Shown here: piece by piece, positions 55,963-64,000 of the stretch
How positions within the stretch are numbered: position 1 is the first letter of the stretch
Layout of the letters: every line of letters begins with the position of its first letter
Assembly: GCA_025558095.1 (NCBI GenBank)
Contig: JAIVFI010000030.1
Location: 496,001-560,000, forward strand
Length of the DNA stretch: 64,000 bases
Origin: Hyaloraphidium curvatum SAG 235-1
Taxonomy: Eukaryota; Fungi; Monoblepharomycota
Direction of reading: 5' to 3'
Notes under the pieces: model-generated
Database searches by the model: none
Told to the model about the DNA's origin: nothing
The model's input: the letters and a program-made list of their open reading frames with translations, nothing else
Position numbers and translations under genes: made by a program

Positions 55963-56431
55963 CGAAGGGGGACACCTTTTGTGCGGGATGATGGCGTGGC
56001 GTGGCGATGCTGATTGGGGACGTCCCTTTTGAGGGTGGAGTTTCCGCGCCCGCCTGGGGAGTTTCTGCGCCCGTCAAAGGGGGGCAGCGGGCGCGGAAAA
56101 TGATTCCCCACCACCTTGGTCATTCAGTCACAGGATCCTATACCCTCTTTTCGAACCGGAAATTTGGGTATACCCACCTTGCAAAAGGCCCTGCGAGTTC
56201 CGAAAGCTCGGCATTTCCTGCCGCCGCTCTGCGTAATAGGCTCGGCGGGCAACCCATGGAGCTGCAGCTGACGGGCGAGGAGATCGAGGAATGCGCGTGC
56301 GACAGGTAATGGAACCAAGGATTCGAAGAGGCACTACCTCTTTCGGTTCCGCGTCGGCAACCCGACATCTAAGTTATACAACAATCATTACGTCTGCCCT
56401 TTCGCCCACTCCAACGGCTGTTCTCCGCCAC

Positions 56432-58539
56432 TCAGTCCTTCAGCAGCCTCCTCAGCACCTTGCCGCTCGCGCTCTTGGGCACCGACTCCACGAACGCGAT
56501 CCCGCCCTCGGGCTGCTTGTAGCGAGCCATCCTCTGCGCGCACCACCTGCGGAGCTCGGCGCGGATCTCCTCGGGCTCGAGGTGCGCCGTCAGCGCGGGC
56601 TCGAGGACAACGTAGGCCTTGGGGGCCTCGCCGGCGCTGCGGTGGGGAACGGAGGCGACCGCCTGCGAGCAAAGCGGGGAAGTCAGATCCTCGACCGATG
56701 CAGGACGGCGCAAGGGGGAAACGTACCGCATCGTGAACGTACGGATGCTCCAGCAACACCGTCTCCACGTCCGCAGGCGCCACCGACAGCCCGTTGACCT
56801 TGATCATCTCCTTGATCCTGTCCCGCACGGCCAGCCCCCCCTCCCCGAACGCGGCCACGTCCCCCGTCCGCAGCCACCCGTCGTCGTCCACGATCCCCGC
56901 GCCGGGCAGCCGCCAGAACGACCGGACGGCCTGCGGCGCGCGGATCCACAGCTCGCCCGCGGTGCCCGGTGCGCAGTCCTCTCCCGTGTGCGGATCCACC
57001 ACCCTCGCCTCGACGTTCGGCAACGCGCGGCCGGCCTGGCCTTCGGAGATCTCCTCCCCGGGGAGCGTCGACAGCGCGGTGGCGACGAGCTCGGTCATCC
57101 CGAAGCCGTTGCGGAGCACGGGGCGGGCGAAAGTGCGGCGCGTGGCGGCGATCACTTCCGAGAGGAGGGGGGCGGCGGCGGACATGAGCCAGCGGAGGGT
57201 GGGGTGCGGGGGGTTGGGCGGGTCCGGGGAGAGGTGCTTGTTGAAGGAGAGGAGCATCGGGGGGACCACTGGGAGGGTGGAAGAGTTCGATTGAAAGGAG
57301 AAGAGAAGCGGTCAAGGGGCTCACCGAAGCCGATGTTGATGCCGTACTCGTCGATCGCGGCCAGCGCCCGCTGGGCGTCGAACTTGGGGAACAGCACCGT
57401 CCGCAGACCCTGTGGGCACGGGGGGATCCATTGGCGGTTAACATAGGCAGCCACCGTACGCCGTCCTGTACCCACCAAGTACATCGACACAAAGATCAAG
57501 TTGAACATGCCGAAGGCGTGGAACACCGGCACCACGCCCAGCACCGTGTCCTCCCCGGGGACAACGGCCGGCGGCTGCAGGGTGGTCTCGAAGTGGGCGA
57601 TGCCGAGGACGACGGCGACGATGTTGCGGTGCGAGATGGCGATGGGCTTGGACTTGCCCGAGGTGGTGCCGGAGGAGAAGAGAACAAAGGCGGGGCGGTG
57701 AAGGGCCGCGTCGTCGCCTTCCGATTCGGGCACGGGGGGGCCGTTTCCGTTGGCGGCTCCGCCCTCGGGCTCATCGCGGCCGAACGGGCTCGGCGGCGAC
57801 CGCCCCGCCACGGGCGAGTAAAGCGCGTGCATGCCCAACTCCACCACCTCCCCCATGGAAACGAACCCGTCCGGCATCGGTGCCCCGTCGTCCCCGTGCC
57901 CGTAGTGGCCCGAGAGCACCTCTGCGTCGTCTGCCACCACGATCCGGTGCGGGTCGCGGCCCATCATCCCCACCCAGGCCTCGGCGGCGCGGCCGATTAC
58001 GGCGGGGTGGCAGACGAGCACGTCGGCGCCGCTGGCCTCCCACTGCGAGGTGCATTCGTACGGCGTGAGGGCGGCGTTTGTAGTGCTGGCGACGCAGCCG
58101 GGGATGCGGGGGAGCGCGAGGGCGAGCACGGGGTACACGAGCGAGTTGGGCGAGAAGATGGCGACGACCACGGGGTCCCGCGGGGCGTCGTCGCCGGGGA
58201 ACAGGTCCGGGTAGGTGAGCGGCAGCCCGCGGACGACGGCGCCGGCGAGCTCGAAGAGCCGCTCGTACGTCAGGCTGGCGCCCGTCGCCGCGTCCTGGGC
58301 CGCACGGGGCACACGGGAAAGGGGCAAAACAAAACGATAACAACGGTTCGACGAGGCGATGTTGGAGATTCGGCGATTTAAGGGGGGATCAGAGGAGTCC
58401 GGTCTGCCGGTTCGCCACCACCCACGACGTACGCCTGCTTCTTCCACGCCTTAGCCACGTGCGGCGACCGCTCGACAAGGTCGGCGCAGTTGACATGGTG
58501 CGGCGGCAGCGCCAGCTGCTCGACGGGCTCGCGCGCCAT
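56432..58539 (-). CDS. AMP-dependent acyl/aryl-CoA ligase (ANL superfamily, 4CL-like), spliced
   Basis: FSSGTTSGKSK, PVFHAFG, GFGMTE, GELWIR, WLRTGD, DRIKEMIK, PKSASGKVLRR. Confidence 0.9.
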
Positions 58540-58648
58540 CGTTGCCGGCGGGGAGACAGATCGATCGGCGGCGGTCGGCTGCTTCGCCACTCGCCCGCCG
58601 CCTTGCCTCCCGCCGAACGAAGCACCGACAAACTCGGCCTTTAAATCC

Positions 58649-58655
58649 TATAAAA
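58649..58655 (+). promoter_or_regulatory. TATA box in the 150-bp divergent promoter between ligase and KS
   Basis: TATAAAA in an AT-rich patch 35 bp upstream of the KS ATG. Confidence 0.5.
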
Positions 58656-58689
58656 CGGCCTCCTAGACTTCGTTCAGTGTCGGCCCGCG

Positions 58690-60504
58690 ATGACGGCCAA
58701 CGGCGACGCGCGGCGGGTGCTGCCGGCGTGGCCCGAGCCGGTCGCCATCATCGGCGCGGCGTGCCGGCTGCCCGGGGGAGCCGACACCGTCGACGCCTTC
58801 TGGGACACCGTCATCGCCGGCGCACCCATCTTCTCCGCGGCTCCAAACAAGCGCTGGGCCACCTCGGTCCCCGCCGCCCCGCCCGATGCCCCCAGCAACA
58901 ACCCCGCCGGATTGCCCCGCGGCGCCTTCCTCTCGGACGCGCAGCTGGCCGCCGACCCGGGCTTCTTCGGCCTGTCGGACAAGGAGCTGGCGTACATGGA
59001 CCCGCACCAGTACCTGGCGCTGGCCGTGTGCTCGGAGGCGCTGCGGAACGCGGGGATCAGGGAGGGCGGCGCGAACGCGTACTGGGACGAGGAAAAGAGG
59101 TGCGCGACGGAGAGGGCGGGCGATGCTGGCGTGTTTGTGGGCATGGGCGTGGGGGCCGCGGACATGGCGACGATCGCGTTGCAGGTGGGACACTGATGAT
59201 GGGGTGAACGGCAACAATGGCCGCTGACGCTCAAGAATCGTGTCGCACAGGCCGAACCGACGCCCTTCACCAACTTCGGCTACCTCCCCTTTGCCGTCGC
59301 CAACCGCGTCTCGCACACGTTCGGCTTCACCGGGCCCAGCGTCAACATCGACACGGCCTGCTCGGGGTCCTTGAGTGCGTGGCACCGGAGCCGTCGTCCG
59401 CTGGCACCGGTGACGAATTCTCCTTCGTCACCCACAGCCGCGGTGCACTACGCCTGCATGTCCCTCCTCAACTCGGAGAGCGAGATAGCCATCGCCGCCG
59501 GCATCAACGTCATCACCAACCCGGTCCGTTCCCCATCGCCTACCCTTCTCGTTAATCTCACCTCTTTCCTCCCACGGCAGTCATCCTACGCCCACATCTC
59601 CGCCCTCCGCATCCTCTCCCCCTCGTACCACTCCCCCATCCTCACCCCCCGCGTGGACGGGTACACCCGCGGCGAAGCCGCCGTCGCCCTCGTCCTCAAA
59701 CGTCTCTCGGCCGCCGAGCGGGACGGCGACACCCCCATCGCGGTGGTCCGCGGCACGGGCGCGGGGCACAACGGTCGGACGGGGCGGCACATGGCCACGC
59801 CGAGCATGGAGGGCCAGGCGCGGTGCATCCGCGACGCGCTGGCCCGCGCCGGGTTGCCGCCGGGGGAGGTGGACTACCTCGAGCTGCACGCTACGGGCAC
59901 GCAGGCCGGGGACAAGCGCGAGCTGCAGACCGCCGTGCACGTCTACGGGGAGGGCAGGGACAGGCGGCTGAGGATCGGGGGGGTGAAGAGCATGTACGGG
60001 CATTCCGAGGGGGCGAGCGGGATCACGAGCCTGCTCAAGGGGGTGATGGTGGGGAGGCACGGGGTGGCGCCGCCGGTGCTGCATTTCGACGGGGCGAGGG
60101 GAGAGTGCGTACCGCGCCGTTCGTTGCGCTGTTCCGGCCGTGCCTGACCCGCCCGCCTCCCAGCGTCGAGCTGCCGCCCACCTTCGAGATCGTCCCGCAC
60201 TCGTCGCCCGTCCCCCTCGCCCGGCGCGATGGCACCCTCCGCGTCGCCGTCAACAGCTTCGGCGCCGGCGGCACCAACGCCTGCGCGGTGATCGAGTCGC
60301 GGGGGGAAGGGGCGGCGGGGTACCCGCGGTACGAGTACGAGGCGAGGTGGGTGACCCGGGAGGGCGGCAAGGCGGGAGGACGGGCTAACTGTGGGGCGTG
60401 ACAGGGAACATTCGATGCCGCAGCAGAGGGTGGGGTACTACCGGACGGCGCAGGTGCGGGGGTGGGAGGGGGCGGGGAAGGGCGAGGAGGCGGCCGACGG
60501 GTGA
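58690..60504 (+). CDS. Stand-alone type I PKS/FAS-like beta-ketoacyl synthase (KS only), 5 introns
   Basis: EPVAIIGAACRLPG, MDPHQ, ANRVSHTF..GPS..DTACSGS, GYTRGEA, ELHATGTQAGD, KSMYGHSEGASG, VNSFGAGGTNA, then ~50 aa to stop. Confidence 0.9.
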
Positions 60505-60661
60505 TCCGGCGGGACGAGGCGGGGATCGGGGGGCGTGCAGCGCTGTATTTCCCTGCATGCCGAGTATCGACCTACCGAGGGGCTTTCTTGGAGGAGGGTC
60601 GGGAGTGCGTGGGGCGCCGCAGGCTAGCGGGGCGGAAACTGCCTCCCACGTCCCATCGACA

Positions 60662-61956
60662 ATGCAGGCGTCTCGCAGGCTCGTCAACGCGTCGACCGGC
60701 CTGGGCCGCGTCGCACTGATGTACTTTCTGCTCCGATGCCTCGCATCGCCTGTCCTGACGCCTTCTCGGACCCCTATCGTCCCCCGCATACGCGACCCGC
60801 TGTCTCACCTCCCCGCCTCCCAGCACGGGCGGCGCCTCGGGGATCGGCGCCGAAACCGCCCTCCGCTTCGCCCTCGCCGGCTGCTCCTCCGTCTTCCTCG
60901 CCGACCTCCCCTCCCAGTCCCCCCTCGCCTCCTCGGTGCTCGCGCGGATCCGCGGCGCCGCCCCCGCGTGCCGCGCGTCCTTCCTCCCCCTGGACGTCAC
61001 GAGGGAGGGCGAATGGATGGACGCGCTCGAGAGGGTGCACGAGGAGGCGGGGCCGCTGGACGTGCTGGTCAACTGCGCGGGTTACGTCAGGGGATGGCCG
61101 AAAGTGCAGGAACACCCGCTCGAGGTGTGGAAGGAGGTGATGGAGATCAACGCGACGGGGACGTTCCTGGGGTGCAAGCACGGCGTGGCGAGCATGGAGA
61201 GGAACAAGGTTGGGTGGGGCGGAGGGGCGGGAGGGGAGAGGTGCCGACTGGAACCGTCGTCGCGCCAGGTCGAGGAGTCCAAGAGCATCATCAACCTGAG
61301 CTCGATCAAGGGGCTCGTCGCGGGCCCCGACAGCCCGGCGTGTGGGGTCCCTCCGCGCTGTCACCGGGATCCGAGCTCATGCACCCTGGATTGCCGCAGA
61401 CGAGGCGAGCAAGGGCGCCGTGCGGATGCTCACCAAGAGCGTCGCCCTCTGTCGGTCTCCCCCGCCGCTCCTTCGCTTACTCTTCTGACCGCGATCTATC
61501 TCCTGCAGCCTGCGCGCAGCAGGGCCTCAACATGTGGGTCCCTCCACCGCCGTGCCGCGCCGCTTTCTGCTTTGACGCCCCTCTCCCCGCCGCCCCCCGC
61601 CAGCCGCTGTAACTCCGTGCACCCCGTACGTGCCCTCGCCCCCCACCCCTCCCTGGCTAACCTCCCTGGCTACCCGGCCGCCCCATTAGGGCTGGATCCG
61701 CACCCCCTTCGTCGACACCTTCCTCAACGAGCTCGAGGCCGCCGAGGCCGCCAAGGCCGTCAGGCACGCCGAGTCGCTGCACCCCGTGGGCAGGCTGGGC
61801 AAGCCGAGGGAGGTGGCGGACGCGGTGGTGTTTTTGGCGAGCGAGGAGAGCTCCTTCGTGGGTCGGCCTCGCGTCCGCGGCGGTGCGGCGGCTGATCCGG
61901 CAAAGCAGATGACGGGGAGCGAGCTGGTGGTCGACGGCGGGTACACGGCGCAATAG
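60662..61956 (+). CDS. Classical short-chain dehydrogenase/reductase, many introns incl. micro-exons
   Basis: Spliced ALITGGASGIG, VNCAG, INLSSIKG, YEASKG, RCNSVHPG, FLASEESSF/MTGSELVVDGG. Confidence 0.9.
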
Positions 61957-61964
61957 CCGGCCGA

Positions 61965-62585
61965 TCAGACGGCATCGGCGAGCGAATCGAACGCCCCAAG
62001 CCCCTTGTCGCCGACCCCCGGCGGGCCCTCGGCGGTGACAAACACCACCGGCGCCTCCTGCACCCTCCTGTCCAGCTCCATCTCCTTGCGGATGTCCACG
62101 TGCGTGAAGAACAGCAGGAAGACGGCCTCCCAGATGAGCACCCAGCCGACGATGTAGACCACCTCGCCGAGCAGCGTGGCGGCGAGCGGGTCGACCTGCG
62201 AGATGAACCAAGCGGGGACCATGGTGGCGGCGCCGAACACCACCAGCACGAGGGCCTTGAGGTACCCGCGCCGCTTTGTCTTGCCGAGGTAGTCTGCCGT
62301 ATGCCGCATGTGCTCCCTGAACACGCCCGCCGCCACGCGCTCCCTCTCCGCGTCGCGCTCCCCGGCGGGCAGGTGCACCGCGATCCGCAGCCCCTTGGAT
62401 TCCCGCAGTGCCAGCGCGCGCCGCTGCAGGAACGTCTGCAGGTCCGGGTGCAGCGTGCGCTGCGCGAGCGGCGCGTAGTCCCACGGCGAGAAGAGCGCGT
62501 CGAAGCGGGGCGCGCCGACGGCGATGTCGGCGGAGGGCGTGCCGGCCGCGCACGGCGGGCCGACGGCGACGATGAGGCTGCCCAT
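61965..62585 (-). CDS. Two-TM membrane protein resembling a prokaryotic hypothetical family, intronless
   Basis: LFSPWDYAPLAQRTLHPD..HLP..E; TM hairpin ending EVVYIVGWVLIWEAV. Confidence 0.7.
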   Translation of the reverse strand: MGSLIVAVGPPCAAGTPSADIAVGAPRFDALFSPWDYAPLAQRTLHPDLQTFLQRRALALRESKGLRIAVHLPAGERDAERERVAAGVFREHMRHTADYLGKTKRRGYLKALVLVVFGAATMVPAWFISQVDPLAATLLGEVVYIVGWVLIWEAVFLLFFTHVDIRKEMELDRRVQEAPVVFVTAEGPPGVGDKGLGAFDSLADAV

Positions 62586-63143
62586 TCGGGGTGTCGGGGA
62601 TCGCGGAGGAGGAAAGGCCGAGCGGCGCCGGCCGGCCGCGTCCCAAACTCCCAACTCGGCATCCCGGCCGGCCGTCCCTCAGAACCACGGCATCCAGCTC
62701 TCCCGCCGCATCAGGACGGAGCCCCGCCCCGATGAACGCGGGAAGGAGAGGATCATCCGGCCGGCCTCGGAGGCGCTGAAAGGCGACGTTGGCGCTCGTT
62801 GGCCCCCACGCCACTGTGAGATTCCCCATCCATTCAGCCATTCGCGGCAGAACGACATGAAAACGCATTATCGGCACACGCAGGGCCGTGATCACGTCAT
62901 CGCGGCGTGCTGCTGCCTGCGTTCTTAGACGCCTCCCAAGGTCCCGAGGAAGAGAGCACCTCACGGTTCCCGCGAGAAGGCACTTCATACCCGCGGTCCG
63001 CCCGCGCGATCTTCCGACTTTGATGCGTCGCCAGGAGGCCCTGGATGGATGGGACGGGCGGGGGGCAAATCCCCGTTCCGCCGTCCCGCCCCCGGGTCCC
63101 GCCCCCACGAATCCAAACCCCGCCGGCACTCCCGTCGCCCGCC

Positions 63144-64000
63144 ATGCCCGCCGGCACTCTGCCCGCCTCCGTGGCGCCGTGCCCCGCCCCGCCGGTCACG
63201 CTCTCGGACGTGCAGGCGGCGCGCGAGCTGCTTTCCGGGGTGGTCCGCCCCACGCCGCTCGAGCACTCGCGCGCGCTGTCGGACCGCCTCGGCTGCCCCG
63301 TTTATTTCAAGTGCGAGAATTTGAACCGCGCGGGGTCGTTCAAGATCCGCGGCGCGTACACGCGGATGGCGCGGCTCACCGCGGGGGAGAAGGCGCGCGG
63401 CGTCGTCGCGGCGTCGGCCGGCAACCACGCGCAGGGCGTGGCGCTGGCCGCGAAAATGCTGGGCATCGAGGCGACGGTGTTCATGCCGCTTGCGGCGCCG
63501 ATCCCGAAACTCGTGGCGACGCGGGGCTACGGCGCCAAGGTGGAGCAGACGGGGACCTCGGTGGACGAGTGCCTGGTAGCGGCCAAGGAGCACTCGGCGA
63601 AAACGGGCGCCGTTCTGATCCACCCGTTCGACCACGCCGACGTCGTCGCGGGGCAGGGCACCTGCGGCCTCGAGATTCTGGAGCAGTGTCCCGACGTGCG
63701 CACGATCGTCGTGTCGGCCGGCGGCGGCGGCCTGCTGGCCGGCATCGCGGCGGCGGTCAAGGCCACCCGCCCCGAGGTGCGCGTCGTGGGTGTGCAGGCC
63801 GAGCAGGCGGCCGCGTACCCGCCCTCCCTGGCCGCCGGCGCCCCGATCCCCCTGCAGAAGATGCAGACCATGGCGGACGGCATCGCCGTCGGCCGCCCCG
63901 GCGACGTGCCGTTCGCCCTCGTGCGCGACCTGGCCGATGGCATTGAAACCGTCAGCGAGGAGCAGATATCGCGCGCGCTGCTGTTCCTCCTGGAGCACGC
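63144..64000 (+). CDS. ilvA: Threonine ammonia-lyase (PLP), bacterial-type, runs off window edge
   Basis: Hand-translated: KCENLNRAGSFKIRGA, ASAGNHAQGVA, IHPFDH..AGQGT, GGGGLLAG, ADGIAV; no introns in window. Confidence 0.92.
   Translation, partial: MPAGTLPASVAPCPAPPVTLSDVQAARELLSGVVRPTPLEHSRALSDRLGCPVYFKCENLNRAGSFKIRGAYTRMARLTAGEKARGVVAASAGNHAQGVALAAKMLGIEATVFMPLAAPIPKLVATRGYGAKVEQTGTSVDECLVAAKEHSAKTGAVLIHPFDHADVVAGQGTCGLEILEQCPDVRTIVVSAGGGGLLAGIAAAVKATRPEVRVVGVQAEQAAAYPPSLAAGAPIPLQKMQTMADGIAVGRPGDVPFALVRDLADGIETVSEEQISRALLFLLEH

What the first reader, a model, noticed from the sequence alone, without database searches (positions are those of the whole stretch)
56432..64000. Candidate new biosynthetic system: AT-less, ACP-less type I ketosynthase paired with a CoA ligase, SDR and threonine dehydratase
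Seen: a complete intron-containing KS gene with intact Cys-His-His triad that stops shortly after the KS domain. It shares a 150-bp divergent promoter with a 4CL-like ligase lacking a C-terminal PTS1 (ends LLKD). An SDR starts ~160 bp after the KS stop, then a membrane protein and IlvA. Known: fungal type I KSs sit in multidomain megasynthases; 4CL plus type III PKS work on CoA esters; stand-alone KSs such as SalC do unusual chemistry. Inference: a dissociated pathway in which the ligase makes acyl-CoA, the KS condenses CoA esters or uses a trans ACP, the SDR ketoreduces, and IlvA may supply 2-oxobutyrate.
Basis: partly seen in the sequence, partly recalled or inferred. Interest (0 to 1): 0.85.

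Follow-up and report, generated by a model that had tools for sequence, protein, structure and literature searches.

The report
Lone ketosynthase paired with CoA ligase
A water fungus and its relatives keep a cut-down polyketide-building enzyme, free of its usual giant assembly line, next to an acid-activating enzyme; the pair probably makes an unknown small molecule without the carrier protein such enzymes normally need.

Summary
The core is real; the four-gene cluster is not supported. The genome is Hyaloraphidium curvatum (Monoblepharidomycetes). RNA-type contigs confirm the introns of a 503-aa stand-alone type I ketosynthase (KS; Cys202/His338/His376) lying head-to-head, 150 bp apart, with a 596-aa 4CL/luciferase-type ligase. 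The orthologous pair recurs in Gonapodya prolifera and two environmental contigs (once rearranged to tandem) while all other neighbours differ, and both genes are under purifying selection. The SDR and IlvA never recur there and look like bystanders. The KS belongs to a 13-member clade of AT-less, ACP-less KSs (three per genome in two species). Its tail models onto the post-AT linker site, and it carries a GD[KR][KR]E motif seen in 0 of 881 other KS domains. In this genome no AT, cytosolic ACP, PKS or fungal FAS I was found. The public 737-aa KS-SDR fusion model is probably an annotation error. Best reading (0.45, inferred): ligase makes an acyl-CoA, KS extends it directly with malonyl-CoA. 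The product is unknown, and I found no paper on the family. Earlier scan notes flagged this locus and two other stand-alone KSs in this genome.

The parts
56432..58539 (-). 4CL/luciferase-type acyl-CoA ligase (ANL superfamily), 596 aa; exons 58426-58539, 57476-58294, 57325-57409, 56727-57268, 56432-56662; no PTS1
   Evidence: Introns confirmed; PF00501; best solved relatives are luciferases and 4CL; P-loop, TGD and A10 Lys motifs intact
58540..58689 (.). 150-bp stretch between the two start codons; presumed bidirectional promoter
   Evidence: Sequence; transcript contigs begin at 58560 (-) and 58599 (+); promoter function is inferred
58690..60504 (+). Stand-alone type I ketosynthase, 503 aa; exons 58690-59184, 59251-59374, 59438-59523, 59581-60104, 60164-60346, 60405-60504
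   Evidence: model pLDDT 91; best folds are modular PKS KS domains, Z about 55
59359..59361 (+). Codon of catalytic Cys202 (His338 and His376 lie in exon 59581-60104)
60330..60480 (+). Conserved C-terminal tail that models onto the post-AT linker site (residues about 465-495)
   Evidence: Model residues to about 480 align with chain residues about 900-914 of KS-AT didomains; motif conserved before the stop across the family
60662..61956 (+). Separate SDR gene, 277 aa; probably a bystander, not part of the conserved unit
   Evidence: Own first exon spliced 60720 to 60824 in a separate contig; PRK07069-like; absent beside the KS in relatives
61965..62654 (-). Intron-free membrane protein of an unnamed, mostly bacterial family; bystander
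   Evidence: No Pfam; Atlas hits 0.95 to bacterial hypothetical proteins
63144..64000 (+). Threonine ammonia-lyase of the ilvA_1Cterm type, running past the window end; bystander
   Evidence: TIGR01127 E 9e-90; ACT domain just beyond the window; absent from related KS loci

Best explanation
A two-enzyme, carrier-free condensing unit conserved in Monoblepharidomycetes. The cytosolic ligase adenylates a carboxylic acid (aromatic or short/medium-chain; not predictable) and makes its CoA thioester. The KS takes the acyl group on Cys202 and extends it by decarboxylative Claisen condensation directly with malonyl-CoA from acetyl-CoA carboxylase. It releases a beta-ketoacyl-CoA or, after two or three rounds, a pyrone-type product. 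This is 4CL plus chalcone-synthase logic run on a type I KS scaffold. Shown: gene structures, expression, intact catalytic residues, conserved pairing, selection, loss of linker and AT domains. Inferred: CoA use by the KS, the extender, the substrate and the product.
For: Pair conserved in H. curvatum, G. prolifera (L014) and L017 head-to-head, and in L018 in tandem, with no other shared neighbour. Linked ligases are orthologues (47-50% identity versus 34-37% for unlinked paralogues) and none has a PTS1. Linked KSs form one clade, 100/100, with their own pocket changes: the near-universal Phe-Asp of the CKTFD motif is replaced by LT or FT. dN about 0.3 against dS 1.2-4.4 for both genes. Cys-His-His intact in all three paralogues of this genome. 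No AT by three probes; the only intact free ACP has a mitochondrial presequence; no type III PKS; ACC present. The same ligase-to-KS logic exists fused in hispidin synthase, AMP-ACP-KS-AT-ACP (PMC10621269).
Against: No biochemistry or metabolite data. Type I KSs normally need ACP-bound malonyl (general knowledge). The genome search is exon by exon and also missed the expected mitochondrial malonyl transferase, so absence of AT or ACP is not proven. Basic residues after the HATGT loop also occur in ACP-dependent FabF (from memory), so they do not prove CoA binding. Two paralogues in this genome have no ligase neighbour.
Confidence: 0.45

Rival explanations
1. Same two-gene unit, but the KS does non-canonical chemistry on the ligase product: head-to-head condensation of two acyl-CoAs, acyl transfer to an amine or alcohol, or cyclisation, as TAS1 and SalC/LctC do.
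For: KS domains without a following AT act as cyclases in TAS1 (PMC8788799) and SalC/LctC (PMC11730586). The ligase-linked clade has a long stem and a remodelled pocket. No malonyl-loading AT was found.
Against: TAS1 and SalC take substrates from a carrier protein of an NRPS/PKS; this genome shows no PKS and only Lys2 plus one A-T protein. Both decarboxylation histidines are kept throughout the family. Best structural matches are elongating KSs.
Confidence: 0.22
2. A dissociated type I system: the KS works in trans with an ACP and AT encoded elsewhere, like dinoflagellate single-domain KSs; the ligase loads the starter.
For: Single-domain type I KS, AT and KR transcripts are known in Karenia (PMC5725682). 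The genome has two Sfp-type PPTases. Small spliced ACP genes are easy to miss.
Against: No AT with three probes. Extra ACP-like hits are one copy frameshifted at the serine site (C24) and one half-domain (C20). No ACP or AT among the called genes near any of the family loci with DNA or gene tables.
Confidence: 0.13
3. Primary lipid role: the family serves as CoA-dependent beta-ketoacyl synthases (like plant KCS or trypanosome elongases) in a fungus without FAS I, and this ligase primes the starter acid.
For: No fungal FAS I found: the KS inventory is three stand-alone KSs, one FabF-type enzyme and thiolases; PF08354 is absent while the Corynebacterium control rings. Three deep paralogue lineages are kept in two genera. 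Three Gonapodya paralogues end in a hydrophobic tail anchor.
Against: At least five ELO loci could cover elongation. This copy and its orthologues lack the tail anchor. A dedicated linked ligase suits specialised metabolism better. FAS absence was tested in one assembly of unknown completeness.
Confidence: 0.12
4. The first reader's four-gene pathway, or the public KS-SDR fusion protein of 737 aa, in which the SDR reduces the ketone and IlvA supplies 2-oxobutyrate.
For: The SDR lies 157 bp downstream on the same strand. The public model P0141 fuses them. RNA does not cover 60446-60664. The C9 paralogue also has an SDR about 5 kb away.
Against: The fusion needs a 323-nt intron whose donor overlaps the stop codon and lacks the +5 G seen in 14 of 15 confirmed donors. 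It would drop the SDR's first Rossmann strand, whose exon is spliced in RNA. KS and SDR lie in separate contigs. SDR and IlvA are absent beside the KS in L014, L017 and L018.
Confidence: 0.05
5. Decaying remnant of a truncated PKS with no function.
For: All other PKS domains are missing from the genome.
Against: Expressed and fully spliced; dN far below dS; same architecture in 13 sequences from at least two genera; structured tail kept.
Confidence: 0.02

Closest known systems
Modular and iterative type I PKS ketosynthase domains (DEBS, Lsd14, mycocerosic acid synthase)
   Same: Fold (Z about 55, rmsd 1.6-2.3 A), 33-38% identity, Cys-His-His triad, post-AT linker position occupied
   Different: Free 503-aa protein; linker domain, AT, ACP and even the trans-AT flanking subdomain are absent; HATGT..GD[KR][KR]E replaces HGTGT..GDPIE (0 of 881 others)
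Hispidin synthase HispS (AMP-ACP-KS-AT-ACP; PMC10621269)
   Same: Adenylating enzyme feeding a type I KS in a fungus
   Different: HispS is one polypeptide with ACPs and AT; here two genes, no carrier and no AT
4CL plus type III PKS (chalcone/styrylpyrone synthase) pairs
   Same: 4CL-type ligase next to a single condensing enzyme; proposed CoA-ester logic
   Different: Condensing enzyme is a type I KS with Cys-His-His, not Cys-His-Asn; no PF02797 match in the genome
Dinoflagellate single-domain type I KSs (PMC5725682)
   Same: Monofunctional eukaryotic type I KS in several paralogues
   Different: Dinoflagellates also express free AT, KR and ACP; none found here; no ligase pairing is reported in the passages read; relatedness not tested
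SalC/LctC stand-alone KS-like cyclases and the TAS1 terminal KS (PMC11730586, PMC8788799)
   Same: KS working without a downstream AT
   Different: They off-load from a PKS-NRPS carrier protein; no such assembly line was found here; neither is among the 50 listed structural matches

Membership tests
Type I PKS/FAS megasynthase | Type I-class KS domain with Cys-His-His | tested here: met
Type I PKS/FAS megasynthase | AT and/or ACP on the same polypeptide | tested here: not met
   Ends at 503 aa; stop after the tail in all readable family members
trans-AT PKS | Multimodular KS-ACP protein plus free AT; flanking subdomain after the KS | tested here: not met
   No modules, no AT found; tail follows the KS core directly
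Type II FabF/FabB or type II PKS | FabF-class sequence and a discrete ACP partner | tested here: not met
   fabF 134 bits against a cut-off of 494, type I models score far higher; a separate FabF-type gene lies on C41
Type III PKS | Cys-His-Asn triad and chalcone synthase domains | tested here: not met
   Triad is Cys-His-His; no PF02797 match
Type III PKS | Acts directly on CoA thioesters | not testable with these tools
   Needs an in vitro assay
SalC/LctC/TAS1-type KS cyclases | Clustered with or fused to an NRPS/PKS carrier protein | tested here: not met
   No carrier gene nearby in any locus; genome ACP hits
SalC/LctC/TAS1-type KS cyclases | Phylogenetic placement with these enzymes | not tested
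   No reference sequences were available by id for the tree
Dinoflagellate single-domain KS | Membership of the protist KS clade and its N-terminal extension | not tested
   No labelled dinoflagellate sequences in the tree; the KS core starts at residue 16, so there is no long N-terminal extension
4CL/luciferase-type acyl-CoA ligases | ANL motifs and nearest solved relatives 4CL or luciferase | tested here: met
True 4-coumarate:CoA ligase | Hydroxycinnamate specificity | not testable with these tools
   Pocket segment reads FHAFGMF, nearer luciferase than 4CL (comparison partly from memory)
FabG-type ketoreductase (the SDR) | Best score to 3-oxoacyl-ACP reductase models | tested here: not met
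   PRK07069 168 bits and (R)-ADH 155 bits against FabG 98-105; all under cut-off

The most novel reading that the evidence does not exclude
Monoblepharidomycetes carry no FAS I or PKS megasynthase and instead use a family of type I-derived, AT-less and ACP-less ketosynthases that condense CoA thioesters directly. The ligase-linked copy makes a specialised product, and the unlinked, partly membrane-anchored paralogues do chain building for lipids. That would be a new route to fungal carbon-chain synthesis and a natural carrier-free type I KS.
Probability: 0.15. Interest if true: 0.95.

Novelty: new variant of a known kind. Interest (0 to 1): 0.72.

Why it matters
Whether a type I KS can work without ACP and AT matters for PKS enzymology and engineering. 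Here two soluble proteins of 500-600 aa make the question directly testable. The family also points to unexplored specialised metabolism in an early-diverging fungal class. The apparent lack of FAS I in a fungus that has acetyl-CoA carboxylase raises a separate question about how it makes fatty acids. The public annotation hides the family under 'thiolase-like protein' and, for this gene, a probably false fusion.

Tried and rejected
1) KS-SDR fusion (public model P0141): rejected on RNA joints, donor quality and the lost Rossmann strand. 2) Alternative donor at 60454: rejected because the conserved tail motif spans it. 3) Representative-library search was swamped by multimodular PKSs and gave only P0141 as useful. 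4) Ligase homologue search found two proteins only, limited by query length. 5) JGI metagenome scan returned only distant, non-family KSs. 6) PF17951 and PF22235 searches are uninformative because no control rang; PF18314 and PF18325 controls were weak; the weak PF13452 hit is a stand-alone hydratase. 7) Ten paper searches found nothing on these KSs; the library omits most subscription papers. 8) The origin of the family is unresolved: long stem, no close donor (at most 42% identity), and no labelled fungal, animal or dinoflagellate references in the tree. 9) The bacterial promoter scan does not apply to this eukaryote. Spliced models were built only inside local scripts.
Full report
Setting. 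The window is G000:C30:496001-560000 of a 31.9-Mb, 55-contig assembly. The public record of this KS names the organism as Hyaloraphidium curvatum, a member of the Monoblepharidomycetes; its closest homologues are from Gonapodya.

Observation. One public run laid over 56330-62300 gives separate spliced contigs for ligase, KS and SDR. With those joints the KS is 503 aa (58690-60504) with Cys202, His338 and His376, the ligase 596 aa (58539-56432, minus strand, ending LLKD), and the SDR 277 aa (60662-61956). The start codons of ligase and KS are 150 bp apart. Pfam finds only KS domains in the KS gene. The KS contig stops at 60445 and the SDR contig starts at 60665, so the KS stop is not covered by RNA.

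Is the KS really stand-alone? The public model P0141 (737 aa) fuses KS and SDR. It needs a 323-nt intron whose donor overlaps the stop codon and lacks the +5 G found in 14 of 15 confirmed donors. It also skips the SDR's first exon, which RNA shows spliced and which encodes the first Rossmann strand. Homologues give the stronger argument. Searches found 13 related sequences: three in H. curvatum (C30, C9, C1), three in G. prolifera, one in Gonapodya sp. and six environmental. In the twelve whose ends could be read, the same short tail is followed by a stop. They form one clade (SH-aLRT 100, stem 1.26), and several intron positions are shared, including the one just before the tail. The AlphaFold model (pLDDT 91) matches modular PKS KS domains at Z about 55, and its residues up to about 480 align with chain residues about 900-914 of KS-AT didomains, the post-AT linker site. 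So the linker and AT domains appear to have been lost internally while the peptide that packs back on the KS was kept. This rests on a predicted model. The family also has HATGT..GD[KR][KR]E where 858 of 881 other KS domains in the fetched set have GDP.E and none has two basic residues.

Which neighbours belong? The ligase-KS pair is head-to-head in G. prolifera (L014) and in environmental contig L017, and tandem in L018. A six-frame comparison shows no other gene shared between these loci and the window. The linked ligases are orthologues: 47-50% identity against 34-37% for unlinked paralogues, a shared unusual P-loop, and no PTS1. The linked KSs are one subclade, 100/100, with distinct pocket residues. 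Both genes show dN about 0.3 and dS 1.2-4.4 on filtered codon pairs; the filter favours conserved codons and dS is near saturation, so this shows purifying selection only roughly. The SDR is not FabG-like, is one of about 100 SDR matches in the genome and is missing from the related loci. The membrane protein and IlvA belong to an intron-free block of bacterial-looking genes that is also missing there. The conserved unit is two genes.

Partners in trans. KS searches of the whole genome return only the three stand-alone KSs, one FabF-type enzyme and thiolases. No AT was found with PF00698, TIGR00128 or a type I AT query. Carrier-domain hits are Lys2, one NRPS-like A-T protein and the mitochondrial ACP; two more ACP-like hits are a copy frameshifted at the serine site and a half-domain. 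There is no type III PKS match. Acetyl-CoA carboxylase is present, as are two Sfp-type PPTases and at least five elongase loci. Fungal FAS I was not found: PF08354 is blank while the Corynebacterium control rings. These are absences from an exon-by-exon search that also missed the expected mitochondrial malonyl transferase, so they are indications, not proof.

Mechanism. The ligase is of the 4CL/luciferase type with intact ANL motifs; its acid is not predictable. I judge it most likely (0.45) that it supplies an acyl-CoA which the KS extends directly with malonyl-CoA, giving a beta-ketoacyl-CoA or a pyrone. Reasons: a kept Cys-His-His set, a dedicated CoA-type ligase, no AT or cytosolic ACP found, and a malonyl-CoA source. 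That bacterial FabF enzymes can use malonyl-CoA slowly in vitro is from memory and was not checked. Rivals are non-canonical KS chemistry (0.22), a trans ACP/AT system (0.13), a primary lipid role replacing FAS I (0.12), the four-gene or fusion reading (0.05) and a relic (0.02). No step of the chemistry is shown.

Comparison with known systems. It works most like hispidin synthase taken apart (AMP-ACP-KS-AT-ACP; PMC10621269) or like 4CL plus a type III PKS, but fails membership of both. Single-domain type I KSs are known in dinoflagellates, together with free ATs and KRs (PMC5725682). AT-less KS cyclases are known in SalC/LctC (PMC11730586) and TAS1 (PMC8788799), but they depend on a carrier protein of an assembly line. 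Loss of FAS I is documented for plant-fed Glomeromycotina (PMC10629195); I found no statement on Monoblepharidomycetes. Ten literature searches found no description of this family.

Verdict. A new variant of a known kind: an undescribed fungal family of free type I KSs, one branch of which is stably paired with a CoA ligase. Interest 0.72. It would be categorically new only if carrier-free activity is shown.

No joined spliced model went to a search tool; the joined ligase search is left out. The KS was searched by window reference and by the database record P0141:1-503.

Noticed in passing
G000 whole genome: No cytosolic fungal FAS I, PKS or AT domain was detected, although acetyl-CoA carboxylase (C11:460186-462318) and at least five ELO loci are present. 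How this fungus makes fatty acids is open.
   Followed up: partly
G000:C9:17110-18911 (L019) and G000:C1:1496570-1498520 (L021), approximate: Two more stand-alone KS paralogues (P0275, P0274) with intact triads and the same tail, neither next to a ligase; the C1 copy lies next to a HpcH/citrate-lyase-like gene.
   Followed up: yes
P0003, P0005, P0273 (Gonapodya; L015, L016, L048): Three paralogues end in a hydrophobic segment that looks like a tail anchor (mean hydropathy 1.8-2.2); the Hyaloraphidium copies lack it.
   Followed up: partly
window 60501-60823: The public gene model P0141 joins KS and SDR through an unsupported intron and ends in a wrong frame; it is named thiolase-like protein.
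   Followed up: yes
window 61965-64000 and L022:1-2432: Block of intron-free, bacterial-looking genes: unnamed membrane protein, ilvA_1Cterm-type dehydratase, DUF2202 protein, hexapeptide acetyltransferase. Possible gene transfer; no tree made.
   Followed up: partly
G000:C24 about 299590-299830 (L054) and G000:C20:29490-29620 (L053): A bacterial-type ACP-like reading frame broken by a frameshift at the serine site, and an ACP-like half-domain behind a ubiquitin-like region.
   Followed up: partly
G000:C17 about 708970-714110 (L025): NRPS-like gene with adenylation and carrier domains followed by membrane segments and hexapeptide-like repeats.
   Followed up: no
L048:20493-21160: A PPTase gene lies about 8 kb downstream of the Gonapodya paralogue P0273; no such link near the Hyaloraphidium copies.
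   Followed up: no
P0005 residues about 270-295 and P0274 near the catalytic Cys: Both public models carry an in-frame read-through intron as an insertion.
   Followed up: no
G000 whole genome: The SDR family is large, about 100 matches.
   Followed up: no
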